In this document: positions 813-62,096 of the stretch, one piece after another | How positions within the stretch are numbered: the stretch's first letter is position 1 | Layout of the letters: each line of letters opens with the position of its first letter | Source of the DNA: Hypanus sabinus | Taxonomy: Eukaryota | Length of the DNA stretch: 64,000 bases | Reading direction: 5' to 3' | Assembly: GCF_030144855.1 (NCBI RefSeq) | Contig: NC_082734.1 | Location: 17,732,001 to 17,796,000 of the forward strand | Notes under the pieces: model-generated | What the model saw: only the letters and a program-made list of their open reading frames with translations | Databases searched by the model: none | What the model was told of the DNA's origin: nothing | Program-made: the position numbers and the translations under genes

Positions 813-17539
<16,727 letters not shown>

Positions 17540-25100: not shown

Positions 25101-28100
25101 TAAACATTTCCCTCCCCTTTGTGTTTCTGGACATTTGCTGTAGCTGACTCTGGCCCTCCATTCGCTCATTCTGCATTAATCTCTTCGGGTGTGGCACGTG
25201 GCCAAGTGGTTAAGGTGTTCGTCTGGTTATCTGAAGGTCGCTGGTTCGAACCTTGGCTGAGGCTGCGTGTGTGTCCTGGAGCAAGGCACTTAACCACACA
25301 TTGCTCTGCGACGACACTGGTGCCAAGCTGTATGGGTCCTGATGCCCTTCTCTTGGACAACATTGGTGGCGTGGAGAGGGGAGACTTGCAGCTTGGGCAA
25401 CTGCTGGTCTTCCATTAAAAAAAAACCTTGCCCAGGCTTGCGCCCTGGATACTTTCCAAGGTGCAAATCCATGGTCTATCGAGACTAACGGAGGCCTACT
25501 ACAATATCTCTTCGGGCTACAGAGAGGTGAGTCTAAGGGGGCTCACTGCTTCAGACAGACTCTCCAAAGCCCAGCTTACACTAGGATAGTGTCTCAGACT
25601 GAATACTTCTCCCCTGCATTGTAGGGGCAGCCCACAGCTGACCTGGTGGGAAGGGTAATTATTTACTCAGGGAATGCGTCCCTGAATCCACAGTGGGAAT
25701 ACTGTCCTTGGCTTATTATTGGCGTATTGAAGGAGAGAGGGGGTAGGTGTGAGGGGTAAGTGGTGGATGCCTGGAATGTGCTTTCTGGTATGGTGGTGGA
25801 GGCAAATACTTTAGAGGCTTTTGGATAGGCACATGGATGTGAGGAGGATGGAGGGATAGGGACGTGGTAGGAGGGACTAGAGTTTGGGTGGTTCTGGTTC
25901 AGTACAACATTGTGGGCCGAATGGCCTGTGCTGTACAGTTCTACTGGTGAATATGTTACATTGTTGGGCTGATTGTCAACTGAGGACACATCAGGCCATT
26001 TTATATGTAAGGTGACTGGAGTCGAGGTAAGAGGGGTTTGCTGCGCGTTTACAGAGGTCTGAAGCCCCTCTGGGTCTCAGTGCCGGAGGAGAGGATTGCT
26101 TGTGCTGGGGGTGACTCCACTTCTGCTCTGCCCGCACCCTCCGCTGCTAATCCACGTTCCAGTGCTCTTGTTGCCGCTCCCAGTCTGGATCTACGGGTGA
26201 ATTCTGACCCCGTGACCCGTGTCTCTGCCGGCAGGTTTTCGATAACACTCCCGCTGCCCTGGATGGGACGCTGGCTGCGGGCGACGAGATCATCGGCGTG
26301 ACCGGGAAGTCCGTCAAAGGGAAGACGAAAGTGGAAGTGGCCAAGATGATCCAGGCTGTGAAGGTCAGAGGGAAGAGGGTCTCACGGCAGGGGAGGGGGG
26401 GTGAAGAGGAAGTGAACAGGGTGAAGTGCTGCATTCTGCATGGGAGTGGGGTTGGTTGGGGTGGGATAGTAGAGGGTAGTGCCACAGAGGGAGGGAGTGG
26501 TTGGTACAGGAGGTGGGTGAGGCCGTGTGAATGGGAGAGAGCGCAGTCTGAATTTAATTACGTCCATTACTGCAGCAGCGATCCCCATAACAGACCAAAA
26601 ATTGACATGGAACCGGAGACTGCCTGTTGGAAAGAATGAGCCATTCGGCCCTTTGAGCTTATTCCATCCCTTCAGTAAGATCATTTGACCGTAAGACCAA
26701 AAGATATAGGAGCAGAAGTAGGCCATTTGGCCCATCGAGTCTGCTTCGCCACACATTGATATCCCCATTTCATCCGATTCCTTCTGGGTGAGCAGAACTG
26801 ACCACACCACTCCAGGTGAGGCCGGGCCAGCGTTTGCTGAGGCTCAGCGCAGCTCCCTTGAATTTAGAGTCTCCCTGTGGGAGGAACGTTAGTAGGAGGG
26901 AAGAAATCATCAATGTTTCAAGTCGAAACCTCTACCTCGGGACCGAGGGTTGGAGAGGTGACGCAAGAGATGCTGCAGATGTGGGGAACGCTGAGCAACG
27001 CTCACAAATTGCTGGAGGATCTCAGCCTGGCCTGTTGAGCTCCTCCAGAAGGTGGGGGTGGGGGAGGAATGAAGTGAAAAGCTGGGAGGTGACACATGGG
27101 AACGATAAACCCCAAACCATTCTTCCAGGTGAGGAAAAAGTTCATCTGCAAACCCGTCAGGGTCATCCACTGTATCCAGTGCTACGTCGGGTCTCACCCA
27201 ACCTCGATGAGACCCGAAGTAGATTGGGGGACCGCTTTGTCGAGTGCCTTCGCTCCATCTGCAACTGAGGCGATTTCCCAGCGGCCAGCCATTTTACTCC
27301 CATTCCGACAGGTCACACCGTGGTCTCCTCTGCTGCCCTCTCACCCCTTCCTTTCTGCATCACCTCTCTGTTGTGCCTCCCCCTTCCCTTTCTCCCATGG
27401 TCCACTCACCTTTCCTATCCAATTATCCACTCAGGATCAATAAAGCACTTATTATTATCAGATTCCTTCTTCAGCTACTTCCACCTATCACCTCCATGTT
27501 TTCCATTTAATTCCCCCCCCCTTCCCGTCACACCCAGCACCCCCTCCTCACTGGGATTCATCTACCTCCTTCCAGCTTGTACTCCTTCCCCCTCCCCCAC
27601 CCCCCTCCTCTCCGGACCTGATGAAGTGTCTCGGACCGAATCGTCGACACTTCATTCCTCTCTGTAGATACTGCTGACCTGCTGAGCTTCTCCAGCATTT
27701 CAAAAACTCAAGAAGTTACACAGATTCTGGAAATCCAGAGTAACACGCACGAGATGCTGGAGGAACTCAGCAGGTCAGGCAGCCTCTATGGAAATAAATA
27801 AACAGTCGACGTTTTTAATTCTGATTTCCATTCCTGTTCCGACGTGCCGGTGTGTGGCCTCCTCCAGCATTTTGTGTGTGTGTTACTTGGGCTTTCTAGC
27901 ATCTGTAGAATCTCCTCTGTTTCTCATGATGAACTGTGGTTTTGAGCTAATTAAACAATTTATTTTTTTGAACTCTCCTTTTAATGTCCTGAAAGGGAGA
28001 AGTTACAATTCATTACAACAAACTCCAGGCTGATCCAAAGCAAGGGAAAACCTTAGACATCGGTAAGTAGTCTTACCTGTCTCGTAAGCTGATGTTTACC

Positions 28101-39442: not shown

Positions 39443-42010
39443 ATCATTCATTGTCTCACGGTCACAGACTTCCATCTGTGGGACTGAAACAGAGACGGTG
39501 TGTGTGGTGTGTCAGTCTCTGGTTCAGTGTTTGCTTTACTGAGTAACTTAGCAAAGGGAAAGTCACACGGGAAGTAATTTTTGTCACAGGAGTTCGCGTC
39601 GGAACCAAGTTTTTATTGACATGGTTTTCCATTTCAGCCCCACAGTGGTACACTACTAACTGTTAGTGTCAGAGACACGAGGGACTCTGTAGATGCTGGA
39701 ACTCTTGAGCAACACACACACAAAATGCTGCAGGAATTCAGAAGGTCGGGCAGCATCTATGGAGGGAAATAAAGAGTTGACATCTCGGGCCAAGACACTT
39801 TGTTGGGATCGGGGAAGAAATGTGTACCATCGAGTGTGCACATGGCCATAAAACCATAAGATACAGGGGCAGAATTGGGCCATTTGGCCCATTGAGCCTG
39901 TTCCGCTAGTTCATCATGGCTGATCCAATTTTCCTCCCACCCCCAATCTCCTGTCTTCTCCCCGTATCCCTTCATTTTCTGACCAATCAAGAATCTATCA
40001 ACCTCTGCCTTAAATATACATAAAAACTTGGCCTCCACTGTGGATCTCCACTATAGATTCACCACTCTCCAGCTAAAGAAATTCCTCTTCTCTGTTCTAA
40101 ATGGATGCCCTTCTATTCTGAGGCTGTGTCCTCTGGTCCTAGACTCTCACCATAGGAAACATCCTCTCCACATCCACTCTTATCAAGGCCTTCCACCATT
40201 TGATAGTTTCAATGAGGTCACCCCTCATTCTTCTGAACTCTAGTGAATACAGGCCCAGGGCCATCCTGGAGTCATTTTTGTGAAAAAAAAAAGGGGAAAG
40301 GATGAAGGGGTAGGGAAAATGGGAAAGGGGAGGAGAGAGAAGATGGGAGAACAAAGTGGGGATGGGAATGAGGGAATGGGAAAGAAACAGGACATGAAAG
40401 CCAAAGGGAACGATATTGGGGAAAAGAATGAGTGACGGGGAAAGAAGAGTGATAAAGTTGTGTAAGAGAGAGAAGAGTGCAGAGAAATGTGTTTCAGGTT
40501 GAGACCCTTCATCAGGACTCGTGCTAGTTTCCCTCCTATCCTTTACTCCACTATCATCTCTGATCAGATTCCTTCTTCCTGAGCTCGTTACCTCTTCCAC
40601 CTATCACCCTCTGCCCCCTTCCTTTCCTGTCCTGATGAAAGGTCTTTGCCCGAAAGTTGACTGTTTGTTCCCCTGCGTAGATGCCTCCGGACCTGCTGAG
40701 TTTGACCACTGTGGCTGTCTGCAGAGTGTTCACAGCCGAGATCAAACCTCAGACAACAAGGGGAAGGTGGGGGGATCTGGGGGTTTGTAGGACTGACGTG
40801 AGTGGGATGCTGGGTGATGGGGCAGACCCAGGAGGTTGTGGGGCCTGATGCTGCCTCTGGCAATGTTCTAATGGAAGGAGTAAAGGGCTCACAGAGAAGG
40901 AGAGGAAAGGAGGGGGAGGGCAGGAGAGAAAGATATCAGGAGGAAGTGTGAAATAAAGAGAAGATAAAGGAAAAGGCAGGAATGTGGTAGGTCAAAGGGG
41001 CTGGATGTATACAGTAGGGGGAGGGAGAGTGAAATGGAGAAGGCAGGGGAGAGGAGGGAGGACGAGGGGCAACAACAACTACAGCCAGCGGTGCAGAGAA
41101 ACCAGGCCTTTGGGCTGATAGAGCCAAGGGTATCAGTCTGGGACACAGTTTATTAGTGAGCAGGACAGGGAGAGGGAGATGGGTAGTGGGGTATCCAGCA
41201 GTGTTTTAGCCAGCCTGGTGCACTATATTGAGCTGTGGGGTCATCCCTTCCCTTGTGAGCAGCCTCTTGGGGTGGATCATGTACCCCAGCATGGAAAGCA
41301 GCCATTCAGCCCATCGAGTCTGCACAAGCTCTTTGTCAGTGGCCACTAGCTCGTTATCACCCCAGTCTCTAACCTTTGTGGTTTCAAACGCCTCCTCGCC
41401 ACCTTCGCTGTCCCAAGGAGGATAACTCCAACCTCAGTCCTCATCTACCGATCTGAAGGTTCTCGTTCCTGGAATCATCGTGGTATCTGTGGGACGTCTA
41501 CCAGTGAACAGAGCTGTGACTTTATTTTAAATGTTTGTTTAGTTTCAGTATTAAATTGCCTCCTTTCCCTTTTGCACTGATGACCATAGACACTGTACTC
41601 TGAAAGTCAGGTAAGTCGCCGCTTGGCCCTTTGAGCGTGCGACACAGGTCAATACAATAACTTCGATAAATTTCAATGAGAATCCCCCCCCCCCCCCCCA
41701 CCCTTCATTCTTCTAGCCCAGGGCCATCCTTCGCTCCTCATACGCTGACCCTTTCGTTCTTGGAATCTTTCTCGTGAACCGGCTCTGGGCCCTCTCCAAT
41801 GCCAGCAGTTTGCCACCACTGGTGCTCGTACGTTCTCCCCGTGACCACACGGATATCCTTGGGATGTTCCAGTTCCCTCCCGCATACCGAAGGCAAACAG
41901 GTTAGTGGTTAATTAGTCACATGGGTGTAATTGGGCAACAAGGGCCTGTTACCATGGTGTCTCCAAATAAGACGAAAGCTCGTGGTACAGGAGGCAGTGT
42001 TGGTGCAGAG

Positions 42011-47910: not shown

Positions 47911-50900
47911 CTACACGGAGAGACAAGCAGAGAAGCCGGACTTTAGAAACATTCTCCTTCGTCTCCTCCTGCCAAAAATCACTGGGATCCTCGTTGTGTG
48001 TGTGTGTGTGTGTGTGTGTGTATGAATGTCTGACAGGTATGTGTCCCTGTGTATGTCAGTTGCGTGTGTTGATGTGTGTGCGAGATCTGCATTTCAGTGT
48101 TTGTGTCCGTGTGTGGGAGACAAGTGTGTGTCAGTATCTGTGTGTGTTGGTGTCTGCATATCAATATTTACATGCCTGTGTGTGCTAATGTGTGTATTTT
48201 AGTGTTGTGCATATCTATGTGTTGCACACGTGTGTGTCAGTGTGGGCATGTCTGCGTGTGTATGCCGATACCTATGTGCGTGCGTGTGTGTGTGTCTCCG
48301 TGGATGTCAGCGTATGTGTGTCTTCGCGCACACTGTGTGCTTGGAGATGTGAGAGACTACAATCATGGGATCTGGAGCAAAAGGAAACTGCTGCAGGAAC
48401 TCAGCAGGTCAGGCAACATCTACGGAGGGAAATGGCCAGTTGACATTTTGGGGTCGAGATCCATCATCTGGACTGGAAGAGTAGAGGCTGGTGCATGTGG
48501 GTCCATTAGACATAGGAGCAGAATTAGGCCATTCAGCCCATCGAGTCTGATCGGCCATTCCATCATGGCTGATCCCGGATCCCACTCAACCCCATACACC
48601 TGCCTTCTTGTCACATCCTTTGATGCCCTGACCCTTCAGGAAACAGTCAACTGCAGCCTTAAATATACCCACAGGCTTGGTCTCCACCACAGTCTGTGGC
48701 AGAGCATTCCACAGATTCACTACTCTCTAGGTAGAAACAAAAATCCTCCTTGCATCCGTTCTAAAGGGTTGCCCCTCAGTTTTGAGGCTGTGCCCTCTAG
48801 TCCTGGATACCCCCTCCATAGGAAACATCCTCTCCACATCTATCCTATCCAGTCCTTTCAACATTTGGTAGGTTTCAATGAGATCCAAATTCTTCTGAAT
48901 TCCAGTGAGTACAGGCCCAAAGCTGCCAAACAGTCCATATATGTTAACCCTTTCATTGCTGGAACTATCCTCGTGAATCTCCTCTGGACTCTCTCCAATG
49001 ACAACACATCCTTTCTGAGATATGGGGCCCAAAACTGTTGACAATACTCTAAGTGCAGCCTGACTAGTGTCTTATAAAGGCTCAGCATTATCTCCTTGCT
49101 TTATATTCTATTTCCCTTGAAATAAATGCCAACATTGCATTTGCCTTCTTTATCACAGACTCAACCTGTAAATTAACCTTCTGGGAGCCTTACATAAAGA
49201 TTCCCAAGTCCCTCTGCACCTTTGATGTTTAAACCTTCTCCCCATTTAGATAATAGTCTGCACTATTGTTCCTTTTACCGAGATGCATTATCATACATTT
49301 CCCAACACTGTATTCCATCTGCTACATTTTTGCCCATTCTTCCAATTTGTCTAAGTCCTGCTGCAATCGCATTGCTTCCTCAGCACTACCTGCCCCCTCC
49401 ACCTATCTTTGTATTATCTGCAAATTTTGCCACAAAGCCATCAATTCCATTATCCAACTCATTAACAAACAATGTGAAAAGCAGTGGTCCCAATACTGAC
49501 CCCTGAGGAACACCAGCAGCCAACCAGAAAAGGCCCCTTTTATTCCCACTCGCTACCTCCTCCCTGTCACTCATTCCATTGTCCAGTATATCTCCTGTAA
49601 CACCTCATCTTGTTAAGCAGCCTCATGTGTGGCACCTTATCAAATGCCTTCTGAAAGTCCAAGTAAATGACATCCACTGCTCCTCTTTTGTCCACCCTGC
49701 CTGTTACTTCCTCAAAGAACTTTTAACAGATTTGTCAGGCAAGATATCCCTTTACAGAAACAAATGCTGACTTTGACTTATCATTAGTCTCCAAGTACCC
49801 TGAAACCTCAACCTTCATGGTGGACTCCAACCACTGAGGTCAGGCTAACTGGACTTTAATTTCCTTTCTTTTGCCTTCCTCCCTTCTTAGAGTGGATTGA
49901 CATTTGCAATCTTCCAGTCCTCTGGGACCATGCTCCCTGACACTCATGCTGCTAGTGTCTTCTACAGTGAAGACAGATGCAAAGTGCCCATTAAGTTCAT
50001 CTGCTATTTCTTTGTCCCCCATTACTAACTCACCAGCATCATTTTCCAGTGGTCCAATATCAACTCTCACCTCCCTTTTTTCCTTTATTTAACTCAAAAA
50101 CTTGGTATCCGGCTTTATATTATTGGCTAGTCTGCCTTCATATTTAATCTTTTCCCTTCTTGTAGCTTTTTTAGTTGCCTTTTGTTGGATTTTAGAAGTT
50201 TCCTAATCATCCAACTCCCCACTCACTTTTGCTACCTTATATGCCATTTCCTTGGCATTTATGCAGTCCTTAACTTCCTTTGTCAGCCACAGTTGCCTTC
50301 ACCTAAAATTTGAGAACTTCTTCCTTGGTGGGGCATATCGATCCTGCGCATTCTGAACTATTCCCAAAAACTTCAACCATCTCTGCTCTGCGTCATTCCC
50401 ACCAGTATCCCCCTCCAATCCACCTGGGCAAGCTCCTCTCTCATGCCTCTGTAATTCCCTTTATTCCATTGCAATACTGATGCATGCAAGTTATGCTTCT
50501 CCCTCTCAAAATGCAGATCATATTATGATCACTGCCTCCTAAGGGTTCCTTTACATTAAGCTCCCTAATCAGATCTGGATTATTACACAACACTCAATCT
50601 AAGATAGGACTTCCCCAAGTAGGTTCAAGCACGAGCTGCTCTAAAAAGCCATCTCCTAGGCATTCAACAAATTCCCTCTCATGCAATCTGACATCAACCT
50701 GATTGTCCCAATCCCCTTGCATACTGAAGTCCCCCATTATAATTGTGTCATTATCCTTGCCACATGCCTTTTCCAGCTCTCTTTGCAATCTCAACCCCAA
50801 ATCTTAGCTTCTCCTTGGTGGCCTATATATGATTCCCATTATGCTTTTTTTTAAACCCTTGCAATTTTTTAACTTCACTCACAAAGATTCAACATTCTCT

Positions 50901-53900
50901 GACCTTATTTCACCTCTTTCTAAAGATGTAATTCCATCTCTTACCACCAGAGCCACACCATTGCCTATGCCTTCCTGCCTGTCCATTCAATACAAAGACT
51001 CCCAACTATGGCCTTCTTTCAGCCACGACTCAGTGATGCCCTCAACGTCATACTGACCAATTTCTAATCGTGCCACGAGTTCATCCACCTTATTCTGAAT
51101 GCTAAACACATTTAAATACAGCATCTTCTGTCTTGCATTCTTCGCCCTTTTGAATTTTGCCTCTGTGGTACAATTTAACTCTTTGCTCTGTCTGCACTTG
51201 TACCCAAACATTGGCTTCTCCTTCATGTATTACTTGTACAGGTCTACTTGTCAACTTGCTGGCTCATCCTCAGCTCTATCATCCTGGTTCCCACCACCCC
51301 ACCATATTAGTTTAAACTGCCCCCAACAGTTCTAATAAATCTGCCCACAGGAATATTGGTCCCCTATCGGATTCAAGTGCAGCCCGTGGGAGAGCCTCCG
51401 AGTGTTGGCTAGATTGCGTGTTCTCTGGGCATTGACTGTCTAGGGTGATATTGGGTCACTGAAGTGTCTCTGGATTAGTGGGGTGTCTCTGGGTGTTTAC
51501 TATCTGGGATGTCGAGTCTCCGAGCATTCATTTTCCATGGGTATTAGTTGTCAGGGGTATCTCAGGACCGCTGGCGGGGGTGCGCGGCACTGACCTGCGG
51601 ACGGGGGTCCGATCAGCACACCGATGGCCTCGATCAGCAGCAGCAGGCCGATGGCACTGGGGAAGTTGTGGGAGCCCACGATTGCCATGAGCACCTCGAA
51701 CTGCAGGGCGCCCACCATGCCATAGGAGACGCCGAAAAAGATACAGAAGGCGATGAGGCCGGGGTAGGTGGCCACTCTGGCACTCAGCACGTCTGTCAGC
51801 CCATTGCAGAGCATGGAGAAGCCGAAGAAATAGGCGATGCGTGGCCGGAGCAGGGGCAGGCCGGCCAGCAGCCCGCTCAGCGGCCGGGCGAAGATGTCGA
51901 TGAAGCCGATGATGGAGAGCAGGAAGGCGGCGTCCCTGTCTGCCACCCCCATGTCTTTGGCGTAGTTGACGATCATGATGGGCGGCACGAAGAGGCCCAG
52001 CACCATGATGAACTTGGCCACGGTGTAGATGACAAAACCGCGGTCCCGGAACACACTGAAGTCCAGCAGCTTGCGGCCCTGCTTGCCCTCTCCCTGCTGG
52101 GCACCCGCCTGCTCAGCCTTCCCCTTGCCCTTCTCTGGCGGCAGCATCTCCTTGGCCTCGGGCCGACCGTCACGCCGCGCCGTCAGGCTCTCTAGTGGCC
52201 GCATGACGGCTCCGCACATGCAGCAGTTGAGCAGCAGGCCGCCCATGATGAGGAAGGCGCCCCTCCAGCCGTAGGTGTCCTGCAGCAGCTGGCCGACCGG
52301 GGACAGGGCGCTCAGGAAGACTGGGCTGCCCGCCGCCGCCAGCCCGTTGGCCAGCGGCCTCCGCTTGTTGAAGTACCTGCCCAACATGATGAGGGAGGGC
52401 TGGAAGTTCAGGGCCAGGCCCAGACCTGGAGGGGCAAAGGAAAGGTCACCGCCATAAACCAACACCACTTCACAGGCATCCCCACACATACACATGGGCT
52501 ACAGGTGCCCTTCAAAGCTTTGCAGACGGCTGCAGTCTCCACAAACCCCGACACATTAATGCAGTCGCAAACGACTCACCACATCAGCTCTACTTGTCAG
52601 AAGTCTGAGGAGGTTTGGTACGTCACCACAGCCTTGCAACTTTCTGCCAGCATCCTGTGGAGAGCATACTGCCTGCTGTGGGGTCGCTAGAGACAGTAGA
52701 AGGCAGCAGAGCCAGCTCCACTGCAGACAAGATGCTCCCCACCCTCGAGGACATCCTTAAGAAGGCGACAAAGTCCATCTCCCAACCCCCCCCATCCTCA
52801 TCACATTCTACAGGGGTTGTATTGAGAGTGTCCTGAGCAGCTGCATCACTGACTGGTTCGGAAATTGCACCGTCTCGGATTGCAAGACCCTGCAGCGGAT
52901 AGTGAGGTCAGCTGAGAAGATCATCGGGGTCTCTCTTCCCACCGTTACAGACAATTACACCACATGCTGCATCCACAAAGCAAACAGCATTATGAAGGAT
53001 CCCACACACCCCTCATACAAACTCTCCTCCCTCCTGCCATCTGGCGAAAGGCACCGAAGCATTCGGGCTCTCACAACCAGACTATGTAACAGTTTCTTCC
53101 CCCAAGCTATCAGACTCCTCAATACCCAGAGCCTGGACTGACACCTTACCTATTGTCTTGTTTATTATTTATTGTAATGCCTGCACTGTTTTGTGCACTT
53201 TACACAGTCCTAGGTAGGTCTGTAGTCTAGTGTAGTTTTTGTGTTGTTTTATGTAACACCATGGTCCTGAAAAACATCTCATTTTTACTGTGTACTGTAC
53301 CAGCAGTTATGGTCGAAATGACAATAAAATGTGACTTGACTTGACTGAACTAGAAGGACTCTCAGCCTCCAGGATACACCCTCTTCTCATTACTACCATC
53401 GGGGAACAGGTACAGGAGCCTAAAGATTCAGAAACAACTGTCAGATATGAGGTTGAAACCCCGGCATCAGTGCCCGCAAACATTCAAGTCTCCTCAAATC
53501 ATCTGAGACGCAAGGGACTGCAGATGCTGGAACCGGGAACGACACCCAGACTGATGGAGGCGGGTCAGGCAGCGTCTGGAGGTGGAGACGTGCTCGATGT
53601 TCGGGTTTGAGGTCCTGCGCCAGGACTGAAGGTGTTGGAGGGCAGGTGGCCAGTACAGAGGGGTGGAGGAGAGGGTTGAGCCAGGGTCTGGCAGGTGATA
53701 GGGGAACAAGGGGCAGGTGGAAGGGGGGGTGGTAGTGGTGGAGCTGGGAGACAGAGGTTGGCGGGTGACAGTGGAGACAGATAAAGAAGGACTGAGAGGC
53801 AGATAAGATCAGGTGGGGAAGGGGAAAAAAATCAAGAAAGATGGGAGACTGGGTGAAGTGGGGGTTTGGGAGAACCTGGATGGATCAGGTGGAGAGAGGA

Positions 53901-56900
53901 AGGAACACAGGGGGGAGTGGTTGACCTGAAATTGGAAAATTCAATGTTTCATGCTGTTGGGTTGCTGACTACCCAGGCGGAATATGAGCTGTTTTTCCTC
54001 TATCCTGCACTTTGCCTCACCCTGGCCGTGGACAGACAGGCTGGTGTGGGAATGGGGAAGGAAATGAAATTGCTGGTTCTCTCTCCTTGCCGTCTCCTTA
54101 TTCCTCCCCCTCTCTGCCCCTCATTGGGAACTTGCCATTAAATGGGGGCTTTTCTCGTTTGCCTAAGTATCTTGTCTCAGAGGGGGATGTGTGTGTCTGT
54201 GTATGGGGGTGGGGGAGGAAACAGGGATTCTATAGAAAATGGCAGATGGAACTTAATGCAGACAAATGTGAGGTGTTGCACTTTGGGAGGACAAACCAGG
54301 GTAGGACTTACAGAGTGAATGGTGGGGCTTAAGGATCCATAATTTCTTCAAAGTGGCTTCACAGGTAGAGAGGGTCATAAAGAGAGCTTTTGGCATGTTG
54401 GCCTTCATAAATTGAAGTACCGAGTACAGGAGATGGGATGTTGTAGGCCTCCATTAGTCTTGATAGACCATGGATTTGCACCTTGGAAAGTTTCCAGGGC
54501 GCAAGCCTGGGCAAGGTTTTTTTTATGGAAGACTGGCAGTTGCCGAAGCTGCAAGTCTCCCCTCTCCACGCCACCGATGTTGTCCAGGGCACAAGGACCC
54601 ATACAGCTTGGCACCGGTGACGTTGCAGAGCAATGCGTGGTTAAGTGCTTTGCTCAAGGACACACACGCAGCCTCAGCCAAGGCTCGAACTAGCTACCTT
54701 CAGATCACTGGACCAATGCCTTAACCACTTGGTCATGTGCCAACACAGATGGGATGTTTCGTTGAAGTTGTACAAGACATTGGTGAGGCCTAATTTGGAA
54801 TATTGTGTGCAGTTCTGGTTACCTACCAACAGGAAAGATGTTAGTAAGATTGAAAGAGTGCAGAGAAAATTTAAGAGGATGTTGCCATAACTTGAGGACC
54901 TGAATTATGGGGAAAGATTGAAAAAGGTTAGGACTTTATTCCCTAGAGCATAGGAGAAAGAGAGGAGATTTGAAAGAGGTATACAAAATTATGAAGGGCA
55001 TAGACAGAGGTTTGGTGAGACTAGAATGAGAGGTCATGGGTTAAGAGTGAAATGTTTAAGGGGAACATGAGGGGAAACATCCTCATTCAGAGGGTGATGA
55101 GAGTGTGGAACGAGCTGCCAGCAGAAGTGGCGGATGTGATTTTGGTTTCAACATTTAAGAGAAGTTTGGATAGGTACATGGATGGGAGAGGTATGGAGGG
55201 TTATGGTCAGGTGCAGGTAAATGGAATGAGGCTAAATAATAGTTTGGCACAGACTAGATGGGCCGAACAGTCTGTTTCTGGTTTAGTGATCTATGGCTGT
55301 AGATGGAACCTGTTCTCTCCCACCTTCCCAAAACTGGCCCTGCAGGAGAGGCCAGAGCGGATAGTCAGAATTGCACTCACAGGCTCCCCGGACTCCATTC
55401 CCTGACCCTGGCCCTGATCCAGTGGCCTGTTTGACCCCTGTGATGAATTTCCATCCACATACCAGAAACATCTCCCTCTTTCCCTCAGCCTCTCCCCACT
55501 GCTGAAGGCCCCAACAATACCTGTCTCACTCTAGGCACACTGGTTCCCTTCACCAAGTTAAACTGCAGCCTCCGTGACCAAACGCAGCATAGCCTCTTGT
55601 TAAAACTTTTGTCCAGTGTTTTCATTCCCCTTATTGGCCTCAGCCCTCGCTGTCTCTGTAACCTCCAGCTTCACCTCCCTCCGAGATCTGCACACTGCTA
55701 CATTCTGGTCTTCTGCCAAGGTCCCAAGTCCCTTCCCTGCAGTCTCTAGAAGGTTCTTCAAGGTCTGACTCTGACCAGGTCTATAGACAGTTCCTGTGAC
55801 ACCTTCTATGTTCAATTAGCTTTGAAAAACACCCTTTGTGATTTTGCCAGGTGAAATACTGCCTGTTGGTGCTGTTGGAGGAGTGGGGAGGGGTGTGGTA
55901 TTCATCAGCTCAAGGGGCAGGGATGTTCACAAGCTTCGTAGGCTGTAACTTTGAAGAAGGCACTGCCAAGAGAAGAGGAACATGTTGGTTGAAGATCAGA
56001 CTGGAGCTGTGAGGAAGGGGGAAAAGACTTGGTAAGCGACAGTACAGGAGCTTGGAGGGAAGGCAGATTGGAAAAAGAGTTAAGGGTGACATTCAGCAGC
56101 AGCTTCTGAGGGCCAAGAGATGGTGACAATGTTGAAGGGAGGTCTACCCAAGAAGACCACATTCAGAATCAGGTTTAATATCCCTGGCATAAATCATGAA
56201 ACCTGTTATATTTGCAGCAGCAGTACAATACAATACATAATGATAGAATGAAATGCAGTATATATATATATAGTTTAATTAAAGAAGTAGTGCAAAAAAT
56301 AGAAATAAAAAAATAGTGAGGTAGTGTTCATGGGTTCAATGTCCATTCAGACATCGGATGGCAGAGGGAAGAAACTGTTCCTGAATCATCGAGTGTGTGC
56401 CTTCAGGCTTCTGTACCTCCTTCCTGACGGTTGCAATGAGAAGAGGGTGGTTGGGGTCCTTAATGATGGACACTGCCTTTCTGAGGCACTGCTCATTGAA
56501 GATGTCCTAGGTACAGTGGAGGACAGTACCCATGATGGAGCTGACAGTTTACAACTCTCTGCAGCTTGTTTCAATGCTGTGCAGTAGCTCTGTCTCCCCA
56601 TACTAGATGGTGATGTGGCCAGTCAGAATTTGCAAGTGTTTTTGGTGACATGCCAAATCCCCGCAAGCTCCTAATGAAATAAAGCCACTTCAACACGTAC
56701 AAACACGCTGGAGGAACTCAGCAGGTCGGGCAGCATCCGTTGAAAGGAGCAGTCAACGTTTCGGGCCGAGACCCTTCGTCAGGACTGAAGGAGGAGGGGG
56801 CAGGGGCCATATAAGGAAGGTGGGGGGAGGGGGGAAAGGTGCCAGGTGAGAAACCAATCAGAGGAAAGATCAAGGGGTGAGGGAGGGGAAGCAGGGAGGG

Positions 56901-59900
56901 GATAGGCAGGAAAGGTGAAGAAGGAATGTAAGGGGAAAGCATTATGGGTAGTAGAAGAAGGCAGAATCATGAGAGAGGTGGTAGGCAGCTGGAAGAGGAG
57001 GCAGAGTGAAAGTGGGATGGGGGAAGGGAGAGGGAGGGAATTACCGGAAGTTGGAGAATTCGATGTTCATACCAAGGGGCTGGAGACTATCCAGACGGTG
57101 TATGAGGTATATCAGGCTCCTCGAACCCGAGTTTGGCCTCATCATGGCAGTGGAGGAGGCCATGTATGGACATATCCGAATGGGAACGTGAAGCAGAGTT
57201 GAAGTGTGTGGCAACCGGGAGATCCTGTCTGTTGTGGCGGACGGAGTGGAGGTGCTTGACGAAGCGGTCCCCCAATCTGAGTCGGGTCTCACCGATGTAG
57301 AGGAGGCCACACTGGGAGCACCGGATGCAATAGATTACCCCAACAGACTCACAAGTGAAGTGTTGCCTCACCTGGAAGGACTGCTTGAGGCCCTGAATGG
57401 TGGTAAGAGAGGAGATGTAGGGACAGGTGTAGCACTTACTCTTGCAGGGATAAGTACCAGGTGGGAGATCTGTGGGGAGGGACGTGTGGACCAGGCAGTC
57501 GCGGAGGGAACGATCCCTGCGAAAAGCAGACAGGGAAAGATGTCCTTAGTGGTGGGGTCCTGTTGAAGGTGGCGGAAGTTGCGGAGGATAATATGCAGGA
57601 TCTGGAGGCTGGTGGGGTGGTAGGTGAGGCCACAGCATCTGCAGTGTACTTTGTGTGAAATATAGCCACTGTCTTGCCTACTTTATAGCTGCATTGATAC
57701 GTTGAGACCAGGTTAGATCCTCAGAGATGTTGACACCCAGGAACTTGAAATTGCTCACTCTGATCTGAACTCGCGCAGCTGCTGACTGGTTGGGACTGTT
57801 ACACCTGTGCCCCACTCCTTTTTGAGAATCGCAAGATCGCTATTAAGTCAGGGCAGGAGACCCAGGAAATGAGACAGAGACATTTGGAATGTTCTGGCCC
57901 CCAGTGATACAAAGCCACGGAATTGTCTCTTAGAGACGGAATTGTGTATTGAGTACTATGCTTCGCGGAAGCCCTCAGGCACCGTGGGCTGGTTGGGGGG
58001 GATGACATCATTCCACCCTGAGTGACATCTGAGACCCCGTGAGTGGGGATAAAAGAGGGTCTGGGGAACAGCCCCTTTAGACGCACCAGAAGAAACGCTA
58101 GAACTCCTGTAACAGCGTAATAGCGAAAGCCCACGTGCGTCCTTTTCCATTTGCCTCGGAATTGTTGGGTCTTGCCACGGAAGAACGGCTTTAGCTAACA
58201 CAAAGGAGCAATCAGCCCCCACCGACTCTCGCAGGATTGACATCATAAAAGGAATGGGCAAGTTTAAACTCTCTCTCTTGACTCCAACCAAAGGCTGCAG
58301 CCTGCAGTTTGAGTGAACTTGAGTGACTTTTATATTTCCATCGGACAATACATTATCCCCTAGACAACAATAGAGCTATTTCTTATTGATGATTATTATA
58401 CCCGCGCTTTTAGATTTAGTATTGATGACATATATTATCTGTATGTTTGCACTGATATTATTTTTGTGTATTTCATCAATAAATACTGTTAAAAATAGTA
58501 CCATCAGACTTCAACGGACCTCTCTATCTTTGCTGGTAAGTGACCCAGTTACGGGATACGTAACAGGACAGACCCTTGGGGACGAGCCAAGCTTTAGTGG
58601 ATGGCTATCACAGAGGGACTATTCCTCCTGTCAGTTGGTGGTGTGTGGGGACAAGTACCAAACAGCATTTCTTTGGGCTGTCACCCACCTGTAAGCACTC
58701 CAGCCGACAGGTAGAGCTGTGTGATGTTGATGGAGAAGGAGGCGATGATCATTCCAGACGAGGCCAGCAAACCGCCCACCAGCATCACCGGCCGGCAGCC
58801 GAATCGGTTCACCGTGATACTGCAGAGGGGCCCTGAGACAGAGATCAGAGGAGTCAGCTCACAGTCCGAGCACCCACTGGGAACCTTCAGCAAGCCTGAC
58901 ACTCTGACCAATCCACCGGGATTTAACGGGGAACTGAGAACCCAGGCTTAATCGGTAACAACTCCACGGTGGACACATTTCAGAGTGGGGTGAGAGGTGG
59001 GTTAAAGAGACCTCATTCTCCCACTCAAATGGGAAATGGCTGGAGTACAGAGTGGGTCAGGGAGAGCAAAACAGTCGACGTTCAGATCAGCGCGATTTCA
59101 TCAGGTCTGAGCATTTGCGAGGCAGTGAGAAGGTTTAGAGGTGGAAACCGTGTCGTGTATTTTAAGTATCTCAAACTCATATCGGTCTGGTTACTGACAC
59201 TACAGTCATTGGAACCACCACCATTATTGACATTAACAAGATCTTCAGGAATTTGGACCCTCTTCACCTTTCCTGCTCCAAGGAGACCTTCCCAGAATTC
59301 CTCATGTCTCTGCATAACCTCACGGTAGGGAGCATCCAGCATCACTTTGCACCAGTTTTACTCTCTGGGGGTCGGGTGACAAAGTAGGGGTGCTGGGAGT
59401 GAGGGAGGGGGTAAGGGGAAATGGATGTGGGTTTGGGGTGAGGATGAGGATAGGAAGTGGGTGGGGTTGAGGCTAGATGCAAGGGTGTGGGTGGTAGGGA
59501 GGGAGAGGATGAGTATGAGGGGTTGGTGGAGGGAAGTGTGGTTGGGTGTGGGGTGAGGGTGGGGATGAAAGTGGACTTGGGTGACGATGAGAGTGAGGGT
59601 GGGATGAGCGTGCAGATGCGGGTAGGGGAGGGACGGTGTGCAGATGGGGTGGAGGTGAGAGAGAGAGTTGGATGAAGATTGGTGTGAGAATGGGGTCAAG
59701 TGAGGATTGGAGTGGGGGTTGAGGTTTGGTGTGAGGGAGGGGTTGGGTGAGAGAGAACTCTGTGAGGGTTGGTGTGTGAGGGTGAAGGTGAGGATTGGTG
59801 TGTGGGGATTGAGGGTGAGGGTTGGTGTGTGGGGGAGGTTGAGGTGAGGGTTGGTGTGTGGGGACTGACGGTGAGGATTGGTGTGTGGGGGAGGGGGAGG

Positions 59901-62096
59901 GTTAGTGTGAGGGGGAGGTTGAGGTGAGGGTTGGTGTGTGGGGACTGACGGTGAGGATTGGTGTGAGGGGGAGGTTGAGGGTTGGTGTGTGGGGATTGAG
60001 GGTGAGGGTTGGTGTGTGGGGGAGGTTGAGGTGAGGGTTGGTGTGTGGGGACTGACGGTGAGGATTGGTGTGTGGGGGAGGGGGAGGGTTAGTGTGAGGG
60101 GGAGGTTGAGGTGAGGGTTGGTGTGTGGGGACTGACGGTGAGGATTGGTGTGAGGGGGAGGTTGAGGGTTGGTGTGTGGGGACTGAGGGTGAGGGTTGGT
60201 GTGAAGGGGAGGTTGAGGTGAGGGTTGGTGTGTGGGGACTGACGGTGAGGATTGGTGTGTGGGGGAGGGGGAGGGTTAGTGTGAGGGGGAGGTTGAGGTG
60301 AGGGTTGGTGTGTGGGGACTGACGGTGAGGATTGGTGTGAGGGGGAGGTTGAGGGTTGGTGTGAGGGGGAGGTTGAGGGTTGGTGTGAGGGGGAGGTTGA
60401 GGGTGAGGGTTGGTGTGGGGGAGGTTGAGGGTGAGGGTTGGTGTGGGGGAGGTTGAGGGTGAGGGTTGGTGTGAGGGGGAGGTTGAGGGTGAGGGTTGGT
60501 GTGAGGGGGAGGTTGAGGGTTGGTGTGAGGGGGAGGTTGAGGGTTGGTGTGAGGGGGAGGTTGAGGGTTGGTGTGAGGGGGAGGTTGAGGGTTGGTGTGA
60601 GGGGGAGGTTGAGGGTTGGTGTGAGGGGGAGGTTGAGGGTGAGGGTTGGTGTGTGGGGGAGGGTGAGGGTGAGGGTTGGTGTGTGGGGGAGGTTGAGGGT
60701 GAGGGTTGGTGTGAGGGGGAGGTTGAGGGTGAGGGTTGGTGTGAGGGGGAGGTTGAGGGTGAGGGTTGGTGTGTGGGGGAGGTTGAGGGTGAGGGTTGGT
60801 GTGTGGGGGAGGTTGAGGGTGAGGGTTGGTGTGAGGGGGAGGTTGAGGGTGAGGGTTGGTGTGAGGGGGAGGTTGAGGGTGAGGGTTGGTGTGTGGGGGA
60901 GGTTGAGGGTGAGGGTTGCTGTGAGGGGGAGGTTGAGGGTTGGTGTGAGGGGGAGGTTGAGGGTGAGGGTTGGTGTGTGGGGGAGGGTGAGGGTTGCTGT
61001 GAGGGTGAGGATTGGTGTGAGGGGGAGGTTGAGGGTGAGGGTTGGTGTGTGGGGGAGGGTGAGGGTTGCTGTGAGGGGGAGGTTGAGGGTGAGGGTTGGT
61101 GTGAGGGGGAGGGTGAGGGTTGGTGTGAGGGGGAGGTTGAGGGTGAGGGTTGGTGTGAGGGGGAGGGTGAGGGTTGCTGTGAGGGGGAGGTTGAGGGTGA
61201 GGGTTGGTGTGAGGGGGAGGGTGAGGGTTGGTGTGAGGGGGAGGTTGAGGGTTGGTGTGAGGGGGAGGTTGAGGGTGAGGGTTGGTGTGTGGGGGAGGTT
61301 GAGGGTGAGGGTTGCTGTGAGGGGGAGGTTGAGGGTTGGTGTGAGGGGGAGGTTGAGGGTTGGTGTGGGGGAGGTTGAGGGTTGGTGTGAGGGGGAGGTT
61401 GAGGGTTGGTGTGAGGGGGAGGTTGAGGGTTGGTGTGAGGGGGAGGTTGAGGGTTGGTGTGAGGGGGAGGTTGAGGGTGAGGGTTGGTGTGAGGGGGAGG
61501 TTGAGGGTTGCTGTGAGGGGGAGGTTGAGGGTTGGTGTGAGGGGGAGGTTGAGGGTTGGTGTGAGGGGGAGGTTGAGGGTGAGGGTTGGTATGTGGGGGA
61601 GGTTGAGGGTTGGTGTGAGGGGGAGGTTGAGGGTTGGTGTGAGGGGGAGGTTGAGGGTTGGTGTGAGGGGGAGGTTGAGGGTTGGTGTGAGGGGGAGGTT
61701 GAGGGTTGGTGTGAGGGGGAGGTTGAGGGTGAGGGTTGGTGTGTGGGGGAGGTTGAGGGTTGGTGTGTGGGGGAGGGGGAGGGTTGCTGTGAGGGGGAGG
61801 TTGAGGGTGAGGATTGGTGCGTGAGGGTGAGGGTGGGGGTGGGTGCTCGGGGGTAGTGCTGGGCTCCATGACCCACCTGTGCCGTAGAGCATGGCGAGGA
61901 TAATAGACGAGATCCAGGCGGTGTCACTGTAGCCGATGTGGAAATCGTGCATCAGCTCTTTGAAGTAGACACTGACGGCCTTGGGGAAAGCGTAGGAGAA
62001 GCCGGTGACCACGAAGCAGCCAGCCAACACCATCCAGCCCCACCCTCCATCAGGGGGGTCGCCTGTTTGTGCGAGCCTGCGGCCTGGGTTACCCAT
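47513..62096 (-). CDS. SLC16A8: Monocarboxylate transporter 3 (MCT3), 4 coding exons, 1593 nt / 530 aa
   Basis: Minus-strand exons 62096-61877, 58832-58689, 52425-51595, 47910-47513; GT-AG junctions, all phase 1. MCT motifs [52 protein letters not shown] and the tail-to-tail position with PICK1 favour SLC16A8 over SLC16A3. An acceptor at 62115-62116 implies an upstream UTR exon. Confidence 0.9.
47995..48350. repeat. (GT)n microsatellite plus GT-rich low-complexity tract
   Basis: Pure TG run at 47995-48020 followed by a degenerate TG-rich sequence. Confidence 0.85.
48505..51387 (-). mobile_element. CR1 LINE (second subfamily), decayed, in SLC16A8 intron 3
   Basis: Minus-strand fragments [44 protein letters not shown]; CR1-type 3' UTR. 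Confidence 0.9.
51595..52425 (-). CDS. SLC16A8: SLC16A8 coding exon 3 ([11 protein letters not shown]...IGPPSA)
   Basis: ctccag| ... |gtcagt; 831 nt; encodes most of the TM helices. Confidence 0.97.
52800..53346 (+). mobile_element. Rex1/Babar LINE 3' end (other fragments at about 6370-6630, 8290-8640, 10200-10460, 18745-19150, 56160-57770, 63135-63800)
   Basis: [47 protein letters not shown]; (GACTT)n tail. Confidence 0.8.
54232..55295 (+). mobile_element. CR1 3' fragment interrupted by a SINE
   Basis: [17 protein letters not shown] ... [17 protein letters not shown] ... 3' UTR. Confidence 0.85.
54443..54746 (-). mobile_element. Second copy of the same SINE, inserted into CR1 RT sequence
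   Basis: Colinear with 25190-25505; 12-bp TSD AGATGGGATGTT at 54431-54442 and 54747-54758. Confidence 0.9.
56690..57655 (-). mobile_element. Penelope-like element (GIY-YIG endonuclease C-terminus plus pseudo-LTR), nested in a Rex/Babar fragment
   Basis: [25 protein letters not shown]...RFVKH...PVATHFN; 15-bp TSD TGAAATA(A/T)AGCCACT at 56675-56689 and 57656-57670. Confidence 0.9.
56750..56787 (-). ncRNA. Minimal type I hammerhead ribozyme in the Penelope pseudo-LTR
   Basis: Minus strand reads CAGUC CUGACGA A GGG UCUCGG CCC GAAA CG UU GACUG: stem I CAGUC/GACUG, CUGANGA and GAAA cores, stem II GGG/CCC, palindromic ACGU stem III. Confidence 0.72.
57797..58565 (+). mobile_element. Solo LTR (769 bp, Gypsy-like)
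   Basis: TGTTAC...GTAACA inverted termini; exact 4-bp TSD GGAC (57793-57796 / 58566-58569); GATAAAAG 58048-58055; AATAAA 58478-58483. Confidence 0.88.
58689..58832 (-). CDS. SLC16A8: SLC16A8 coding exon 2 ([15 protein letters not shown]...AGVLT)
   Basis: tctcag| ... |gtgggt; 144 nt. Confidence 0.95.
59700..61845. repeat. G-rich TGAGGG-based minisatellite array, about 2.1 kb, in SLC16A8 intron 1
   Basis: 24/30-bp units GGGGGAGGTT(GAGGGT)GAGGGTTGGTGTG(A/T); 187-bp higher-order period in the left part (GTTAG at 59901, 60088, 60275). Confidence 0.97.
61877..62096 (-). CDS. SLC16A8: SLC16A8 coding exon 1 (MGNPGRR...PPDGGWGW...MLYGT)
   Basis: aggATGG start context; donor G|gtgggt. Confidence 0.93.

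What the first reader, a model, noticed from the sequence alone, without database searches (positions are those of the whole stretch)
56750..56787. Intact minimal hammerhead ribozyme on the sense strand of the SLC16A8 pre-mRNA
Seen in sequence: the minus strand reads CAGUC-CUGACGA-A-GGG-UCUCGG-CCC-GAAA-CG-UU-GACUG. This gives a perfect 5-bp stem I, both catalytic boxes, a 3-bp stem II and a loopless palindromic stem III (ACGU), with predicted cleavage after GUU (56755/56754). It sits in the pseudo-LTR of a Penelope insertion with a 15-bp TSD. Established: Penelope-like elements carry minimal type I hammerheads whose palindromic stem III needs dimerisation. Inference: the insertion is co-oriented with SLC16A8, so every primary transcript carries a potentially self-cleaving motif in intron 2. 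That could affect splicing or co-transcriptional decay of an MCT3 transcript.
Basis: partly seen in the sequence, partly recalled or inferred. Interest (0 to 1): 0.7.

Follow-up and report, generated by a model that had tools for sequence, protein, structure and literature searches.

The report
Ordinary Penelope hammerhead in MCT3 intron
This is a real but ordinary copy of the tiny "hammerhead" self-cutting RNA motif that Penelope-like jumping genes carry at their ends; it sits in an intron of a stingray lactate-transporter gene, and as a lone copy that needs a partner to fold it most likely does nothing to that gene.

Summary
The minus strand 56787-56750 reads exactly as reported and fits the published minimal hammerhead (min-HHR) of Penelope-like elements (PLEs). 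It has both catalytic boxes, the extra nucleotide between A9 and G10.1, a G10.1-C11.1 pair, a loopless ACGU helix III and a 5-bp helix I. The predicted cut is at 56755/56754. My descriptor finds only this hit in the window and none in 300 shuffles.

The motif lies about 255 nt after the stop of a dead, 5'-truncated Neptune-like PLE (57655-56690). That copy has a frameshifted GIY-YIG remnant, no RT and a 14/15 target-site duplication. It sits in the GT-AG intron (58688-52426) between coding exons 2 and 3 of Hypanus sabinus MCT3/SLC16A8, in sense orientation.

The functional inference is weak. Nine decayed sister copies lie in the same 64 kb, and the HHR/tail is the most repeated part of the stretch in related genomes. 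This scan has flagged the same family many times on other DNA of this genome. Published tests found no cleavage by single min-HHRs and only low cleavage by dimers. No intact partner copy lies in the pre-mRNA, and no RNA data were available. Rfam does not call it.

Verdict: a known kind of element, of low interest.

The parts
56750..56787 (-). Minimal type I hammerhead motif (min-HHR): helix I CAGUC/GACUG, box CUGACGA, extra A, helix II GGG(U)-CUCG-(G)CCC, GAAA, loopless palindromic helix III ACGU, H17 = U
   Evidence: features match the min-HHR description in PMC4209133
56754..56755 (-). Predicted scissile bond, 3' of U17 (56755) and 5' of G1.1 (56754)
   Evidence: Numbering derived from the sequence; cleavage itself was not tested
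56690..56749 (-). Conserved 3' tail of the element (GATGCTGCCCGACCTGCTGAGTTCCTCCAGC...GTGTTG), shared by all sister copies
   Evidence: the bin 56624-56787 is the most repeated part of the stretch in related genomes
56788..57040 (-). C/T-rich 3' untranslated spacer between the ORF stop and the hammerhead
   Evidence: the same layout is seen in the second copy at 27270-27610(+)
57041..57640 (-). Remnant of the PLE ORF C-terminus: CX3CxxC linker, GIY-YIG endonuclease with cysteines between GIY and YIG, at least 2 frameshifts, inferred stop TAA at 57043-57041; no RT
   Evidence: Pfam GIY-YIG 22.3 bits against a cut-off of 22.6; 2759 relatives, and the full-length ones have RVT_1 plus a C-terminal GIY-YIG
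56690..57655 (-). Whole 5'-truncated PLE insertion (about 966 bp), including a 26-nt non-ORF stretch at its 5' end (57655-57630)
57656..57670 (-). Target-site duplication, upstream copy AGTGGCTATATTTCA
56675..56689 (-). Target-site duplication, downstream copy AGTGGCTTTATTTCA (14/15 identical)
52426..58688 (-). GT-AG intron of MCT3/SLC16A8 between the 144-nt coding exon 2 (58832-58689) and coding exon 3 (52425-51590); the hammerhead lies 1.93 kb from the donor
48390..48487 (-). Only other sense-strand copy of the HHR+tail module inside the gene (next intron); core mutated (CCAGAUGAUGG...CCCCAAAAUGUC)

Best explanation
The motif is the 3'-terminal minimal hammerhead of a dead, 5'-truncated, Neptune-like Penelope-like retrotransposon. 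The element inserted by target-primed reverse transcription into an older repeat inside an intron of stingray MCT3/SLC16A8. In the living element, two such motifs from tandem copies are thought to pair through the palindromic ACGU, and through helix I in trans, to form a double hammerhead that processes the element's own multimeric transcript. That step is inferred from the literature and was not tested here. At this locus the motif stands alone. It cannot form helix III by itself and has no intact partner in the pre-mRNA. It is most likely a neutral passenger that leaves with the intron and has no measurable effect on MCT3 expression. Its intact core reflects the modest age of the insertion and changes that fell on tolerated positions, not selection at this site.
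For: The motif is exact, and only this copy in the window fits the descriptor, with 0 of 300 shuffles matching. It shows every feature that Cervera & de la Pena list for PLE min-HHRs. These are an extra nucleotide between 9 and 10.1, G10.1-C11.1, palindromic 15.2-16.2, helix I of 4-5 bp and no helix III loop. The PLE context is clear: a GIY-YIG remnant with a CX3CxxC linker and cysteines between GIY and YIG directly upstream, and relatives with RVT_1 plus a C-terminal GIY-YIG. A 14/15 TSD flanks the insertion and the host repeat's ORF continues through the empty site. Nine further copies of the HHR and/or tail module lie in the same 64 kb, all with broken cores. The HHR/tail bin has by far the highest summed depth in related genomes. 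This copy differs from the majority of window copies at N7 (U to C) and H17 (C to U, a CpG transition), both positions where any or most bases are tolerated. The ORF has frameshifts and the RT is missing. Published assays found no detectable cleavage by a single min-HHR and low cleavage by dimers (review). In Xenopus, about 43% of the related HHR-bearing retrozyme copies are intronic. Folding favours inactive structures.
Against: No RNA data for this locus could be obtained, so cleavage in vivo is not excluded. Nearest-neighbour energies ignore the tertiary contacts of the hammerhead core. Abundant family transcripts could in principle supply a partner in trans. The family consensus rests on only about nine decayed copies in one window. 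Rfam's hammerhead models do not recognise the motif, so its identity rests on the descriptor-based min-HHR class and on its PLE context.
Confidence: 0.85

Rival explanations
1. One reading: the sense-strand hammerhead cleaves the MCT3 pre-mRNA in cis or between two nascent transcripts, and so affects splicing or co-transcriptional decay of the gene.
For: Sense orientation and an intact core are confirmed. Conserved type I hammerheads in amniote introns (RECK, CTCL) have been proposed to act in mRNA biogenesis.
Against: Helix III has no loop, so a monomer cannot fold into the active form. A single min-HHR showed no detectable cleavage in vitro. There is no second intact sense copy in the gene. 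The inactive rod is the predicted monomer fold. The amniote intronic hammerheads have loop-loop tertiary contacts and deep conservation, and neither is seen here. The copy belongs to a massively repeated family.
Confidence: 0.04
2. Occasional trans cleavage: RNAs from other copies of the same abundant PLE family pair with the intronic copy through ACGU and helix I, forming a heterodimeric double hammerhead that cuts a small fraction of MCT3 pre-mRNA or excised intron.
For: The family is extremely abundant and many copies share the CAGUC/GACUG and ACGU elements. Dimers and trimers do cleave, though weakly. Contigs in related genomes show head-to-tail hammerhead units (table 5c).
Against: Dimer activity in vitro is low and mostly seen at non-physiological Mg2+. 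The active dimer is predicted to be less stable than the alternatives. Expression of partner RNAs in MCT3-expressing cells is unknown. A cut within an intron, made after or during splicing, would have little consequence.
Confidence: 0.08
3. A chance match to the hammerhead core with no biological origin as a ribozyme.
For: The core-only pattern (CUGANGA...GAAA NN U H) occurs about 0.6 times per shuffled window. Rfam gives no hit.
Against: The full descriptor gives 0 hits in 300 shuffles. The motif is homologous to nine other copies that share its flanks and sits at the expected place behind a PLE endonuclease ORF. A distant full-length PLE (L002) has an equivalent motif 384 nt after its stop, with covarying helix II and helix III palindrome.
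Confidence: 0.01

Closest known systems
Minimal hammerheads (min-HHRs) of metazoan Penelope-like elements (Cervera & de la Pena 2014, PMC4209133; Lunse, Weinberg & Breaker 2017, cited in PMC6765202)
   Same: Type I topology, no helix III loop, palindromic 15.2-16.2, an unpaired nucleotide between A9 and G10.1, G10.1-C11.1, a short helix I, location in the terminal repeat region behind the RT-EN ORF, and occurrence mostly as single motifs of truncated copies spread through fish and amphibian genomes.
   Different: Nothing essential. Helix II is short here (3-4 bp, against the 6-8 bp reported for Schistosoma and Drosophila). N7 = C and H17 = U differ from the local majority (U, C).
Neptune-clade EN+ PLEs of fishes (Arkhipova 2006; Craig et al. 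2021, PMC8557442)
   Same: C-terminal GIY-YIG with cysteines between GIY and YIG, an extra CX2-5CxxC zinc-finger-like linker before the EN, variable TSD, frequent 5' truncation, and inverted or partial copies nearby in the window.
   Different: This copy has no RT, no upstream pLTR and a frameshifted EN. The clade was assigned from the linker motif only; no tree was built.
Conserved intronic type I hammerheads of amniotes (HH9/HH10: RECK, CTCL, DTNB; de la Pena & Garcia-Robles 2010, cited in PMC6155905)
   Same: A sense-strand type I hammerhead inside an intron of a protein-coding gene, probably derived from a retroelement.
   Different: Those have a full helix III or loop-loop tertiary contacts, are single-copy, are conserved across classes of vertebrates, and are recognised by Rfam models. 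This one is minimal, repeated, lineage-specific and not recognised by Rfam.
Non-LTR retrozymes of animals (de la Pena lab 2020, PMC7229834; Li, Clavereau & Pollet 2026 preprint)
   Same: Hammerhead modules related to PLE pLTRs; many copies are monomers and about 43% are intronic in Xenopus; reported in one chondrichthyan.
   Different: Retrozymes are tandem non-autonomous units that give circular RNAs. Here the motif is attached to a PLE ORF remnant and is not in tandem.
Double hammerheads of newt satellite 2 and ASBVd (Forster et al. 1988, cited in PMC4209133)
   Same: Helix III is too weak in a monomer, and the active form arises when two units pair.
   Different: Those units are in tandem multimeric transcripts. 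This copy is solitary.

Membership tests
PLE minimal hammerhead (min-HHR) | Conserved core: C3 U4 G5 A6 N7 G8 A9 ... G12 A13 A14 A15.1 ... U16.1 H17 | tested here: met
   All positions are present (CUGACGA, GAAA, U, U17)
PLE minimal hammerhead (min-HHR) | One unpaired nucleotide between A9 and G10.1, and a G10.1-C11.1 pair | tested here: met
   An extra A, then G...C closing helix II; both are listed as family hallmarks in PMC4209133
PLE minimal hammerhead (min-HHR) | No or minimal helix III, with palindromic 15.2-16.2 that allows a dimeric helix III | tested here: met
   A15.1 C15.2 G16.2 U16.1 = ACGU, with zero loop
PLE minimal hammerhead (min-HHR) | Located in the terminal repeat (3' end) of a PLE | tested here: met
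   About 255 nt after the inferred stop of a GIY-YIG ORF remnant, inside a TSD-flanked insertion
PLE minimal hammerhead (min-HHR) | Site-specific self-cleavage as a dimer | not testable with these tools
   Only folding energies are available. The active double hammerhead scores -19.3 kcal/mol against -34.1 for an inactive duplex. Only contigs of unrecorded or guessed kind could be laid, and they cannot show RNA ends
Rfam hammerhead families (RF00163 and relatives) | Covariance-model score at or above the gathering threshold | tested here: not met
   No hammerhead match at gathering, nor at E<=10 on 1.6 kb or 101 nt. My inference, not tested: the models expect a helix III hairpin
Canonical EN+ Penelope-like element (Neptune-like) | GIY-YIG endonuclease with cysteines between GIY and YIG, plus a CX2-5CxxC linker | tested here: met
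   CKSKCYTC linker and [18 protein letters not shown]; Pfam GIY-YIG 22.3 bits, just under the 22.6 cut-off; criteria from PMC8557442
Canonical EN+ Penelope-like element (Neptune-like) | Telomerase-like RT domain upstream of the EN | tested here: not met
   This copy is 5'-truncated and holds only about 200 codons of the C-terminus. Full-length relatives of the fragment do carry RVT_1 plus GIY-YIG
Canonical EN+ Penelope-like element (Neptune-like) | Target-site duplication of variable length; partial tandem (pLTR) or inverted arrangement | tested here: inconclusive
   A 14/15 TSD is present. There is no tandem or upstream pLTR at this locus. Inverted arrangements are seen at other copies in the window
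Domesticated intronic hammerhead (HH9/HH10 type) | Single-copy motif conserved at the orthologous intron position across distant species, with a stable monomeric fold | tested here: not met
   The motif is a member of a highly repeated family, and its monomer cannot form helix III. Orthologous-site conservation could not be examined because contigs break at the repeat

The most novel reading that the evidence does not exclude
The solitary sense-strand min-HHR is cut in vivo after pairing in trans with RNAs of the same very abundant PLE family. Thousands of intronic PLE tails would then make host pre-mRNAs, MCT3 included, targets of a genome-wide, transposon-driven trans-ribozyme activity.
Probability: 0.04. 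Interest if true: 0.55.

Novelty: already known. Interest (0 to 1): 0.12.

Why it matters
As it stands it matters little. It is one more copy of a ribozyme motif already known to be carried by Penelope-like elements and scattered, often in introns, through fish, amphibian and reptile genomes. Two points are useful. First, it shows that Rfam-based annotation misses this class entirely. Second, stingray genomes hold a very abundant min-HHR family, with tandem units elsewhere. That family would be good material for testing whether such minimal hammerheads cleave in vivo at all. Only direct evidence of cleavage of host pre-mRNAs would raise its importance.

Tried and rejected
1. Rfam 15 was run at gathering on the whole window and at E<=10 on 1.6 kb and on 101 nt. 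It gave no hammerhead family, only chance-level matches to unrelated families.

2. My first fixed-gap DNA pattern used the wrong spacing and found nothing. The corrected pattern found the motif.

3. RNA evidence was sought. The look-up of sequencing runs listed no run on record as RNA. The four runs laid are contigs only, so no ends, strand or expression level can be read. The run guessed to be RNA has zero depth on the unique intron parts and on exon 2.

4. Whether the insertion is present at the orthologous site in relatives cannot be read, because contigs break at the repeats.

5. Cross-species linkage of EN ORF and HHR gave little. The search for homologous proteins gave one short hit. Of five loci fetched through full-length or partial relatives, only L002 shows a min-HHR behind the ORF. 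L001 has only 290 nt of 3' flank, L003 and L004 show none with my descriptors, and the L005 (skate) copy is interrupted about 35 nt after its stop. The closest relatives lie on assemblies too large to fetch.

6. An exact-pattern scan of metagenome contigs for the family's HHR found nothing.

7. The MFE z-score of the 38-mer is unremarkable (-1.64) and says nothing about ribozyme identity.

8. I considered a heterodimer with the decayed sense copy at 48487-48390. Its substrate strand could pair with 4 of 5 helix I positions, but it is 8 kb away in another intron, so I did not pursue it.

Full report
**Observation.** The minus strand from 56787 to 56750 reads CAGTCCTGACGAAGGGTCTCGGCCCGAAACGTTGACTG. 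It is unique in the window at up to three mismatches.

- In hammerhead numbering it gives helix I CAGUC/GACUG (5 bp), then C3 U4 G5 A6 C7 G8 A9, then one extra A.
- Helix II is GGG/CCC. It can be extended by a U.G pair to 4 bp around a CUCG loop.
- Then come G12 A13 A14, then A15.1 C15.2 G16.2 U16.1 with no loop, then U17 followed by G1.1.
- My descriptor encoded these requirements. It finds this one site on both strands of the 64 kb and none in 300 dinucleotide-preserving shuffles. The bare core pattern occurs about 0.6 times per shuffle.
- Rfam 15 does not call it, at gathering or at E<=10 on 1.6 kb or on 101 nt. I think this is because the curated hammerhead models expect a helix III hairpin, but that is my inference.

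**What it belongs to.** Directly upstream on the same strand (57640-57041) lies the C-terminal end of a Penelope-like element ORF.

- It has a CKSKCYTC (CX3CxxC) linker and a GIY-YIG endonuclease with cysteines between GIY and YIG ([18 protein letters not shown]).
- It carries at least two frameshifts and no reverse transcriptase.
- Pfam GIY-YIG scores 22.3 bits against a cut-off of 22.6.
- An exhaustive HMMER search finds 2759 relatives. The full-length ones carry RVT_1 plus a C-terminal GIY-YIG, which is the canonical EN+ PLE layout.
- The linker motif is the one Craig et al. 2021 give for the Neptune and Nematis clades.
- The insertion runs from 57655 to 56690. It is flanked by AGTGGCTATATTTCA (57670-57656) and AGTGGCTTTATTTCA (56689-56675), 14 of 15 identical.
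- Removing the insertion and one repeat restores a continuous RT-like reading frame of an older repeat (...ARQWLYF|[10 protein letters not shown]...). This fixes the boundaries.
- The hammerhead lies about 255 nt after the inferred stop (TAA 57043-57041), behind a C/T-rich spacer. It is followed by a 60-nt tail.

**A dispersed family.**

- BLAST of the insertion against the window finds eight further copies of the hammerhead/tail module, and adds a truncated one. One of them (27100-27700) again sits behind an EN remnant.
- All have broken cores: C3U, U4A, G12A, G12C, A14U, loss of C15.2, or truncation. Only the copy under study is intact.
- Against the majority of these copies it differs at N7 (U to C) and H17 (C to U, a CpG transition). 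Both positions tolerate these bases.
- When contigs of four public runs are laid on 54000-58900, the unique intron parts have depths of about 5-25. The bin 56624-56787 reaches summed depths of 0.75-2.7 million, the highest or joint-highest of the stretch in those three runs.
- The scan's own index lists over twenty notes on the same family on other DNA of this genome.

**Host gene.**

- The large ORF at 52495-51554(-) is 100% identical to monocarboxylate transporter 3 of Hypanus sabinus. Its best matches across vertebrates are MCT3/SLC16A8.
- Mapping that 530-aa protein gives coding exons at about 62096-61877, 58832-58689 (144 nt), 52425-51590 and 47911-47516, all on the minus strand and with GT-AG borders.
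- The hammerhead is therefore in sense orientation inside the 6,263-nt intron between coding exons 2 and 3, 1.93 kb from the donor. 'Intron 2' is right if only coding exons are counted.

**How it most likely works, or does not.**

- Cervera and de la Pena (2014) defined this class. They list as hallmarks the nucleotide between 9 and 10.1, G10.1-C11.1 and the palindromic 15.2-16.2. They found most copies as single motifs of truncated PLEs. They saw no detectable cleavage by a single motif and only low cleavage by dimers or trimers. A 2019 review says the same.
- A loopless ACGU cannot close on itself. In the double hammerhead both helix III and helix I form between two copies.
- Within the MCT3 transcription unit the only other sense copy (48487-48390) has a mutated core.
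- Nearest-neighbour folding puts the monomer in a rod that pairs G5-G8 with C15.2-U17 (-12.9 kcal/mol; 66% of the ensemble). The hammerhead-compatible state scores -10.5.
- For two copies, folding prefers an extended inactive duplex (-34.1) to the active double hammerhead (-19.3). These energies ignore the tertiary contacts of the core.
- The best reading is a neutral relic that is removed with the intron. No RNA data could be brought to bear, so rare cleavage, for example after pairing with other family RNAs, is not excluded.

**Comparison and novelty.**

- The motif meets every sequence criterion of the PLE min-HHR class and lies where that class lies. It fails the Rfam hammerhead models.
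- It differs from the conserved intronic hammerheads of amniotes, which are single-copy, deeply conserved and have stabilising tertiary contacts.
- Related HHR modules (non-LTR retrozymes) have been reported in one chondrichthyan, and about 43% of the Xenopus copies are intronic. A sense intronic copy is therefore expected by chance in a genome full of them.
- One distant full-length PLE recovered here (L002) has an equivalent motif 384 nt after its stop. Its helix II (GACU/AGUC) and its helix III palindrome (AUAU) covary with those here. This agrees with the published conservation.
- I rate the finding as a known kind of element and of low interest.

Noticed in passing
window 56742-56786 (as seen in contigs of runs X16 and X17, table 5c): Contigs from related genomes join 56786 back to 56752 with 4 letters between (CAGT or CACT), or back to 56742 with 5 letters. 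Elsewhere in those genomes the roughly 38-nt hammerhead unit therefore stands head-to-tail with a period of about 39-50 nt. Such tandem arrays would supply the dimer context the ribozyme needs.
   Followed up: no
window 59762-61841: A G-rich minisatellite of about 2 kb (TGAGGG-based, periods 6, 24 and 54, up to 77 copies of the 24-mer) fills much of MCT3 intron 1. It produces long spurious proline- and histidine-rich ORFs on the minus strand and a GC skew of 0.92.
   Followed up: partly
window 27100-27810: A second PLE 3' end on the plus strand has an EN remnant, a C/T-rich spacer, a decayed hammerhead (GAAU instead of GAAA) and a tail. An inverted tail copy follows at 27742-27810(-). This is the inverted-repeat arrangement described for PLE insertions.
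   Followed up: partly
window 40491-40702: Two decayed hammerhead modules lie on opposite strands about 100 nt apart: 40608-40702(+), which lacks C15.2, and 40515-40491(-), which is truncated after GAAAC. This matches the 'dual motifs on opposite strands' noted by Cervera & de la Pena.
   Followed up: partly
window 57630-57655 (-): The insertion starts with 26 nt (CACAAAGTACACTGCAGATGCTGTGG) that are not part of the ORF. This may be the short 'tail' extension that Craig et al. describe at the ends of PLE insertions.
   Followed up: no
window 3321-3611(+) and 26298-26640(+): ORF fragments look like adenylosuccinate lyase (about 3.3 kb) and like the PICK1 PDZ domain (about 26.3 kb). I recognised both by eye and from memory; neither was tested with a tool. 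From memory PICK1 lies beside SLC16A8 in human, so synteny may be conserved.
   Followed up: no
L002 2822-2865 (+): A metagenome-derived contig encodes a full-length RT plus GIY-YIG PLE and has a min-HHR 384 nt after the stop: GC-CUGAGGA-A-GACU(ACAU)AGUC-GAAA-UA-UU|GC. Helix I is only 2 bp and the helix III palindrome is AUAU.
   Followed up: partly
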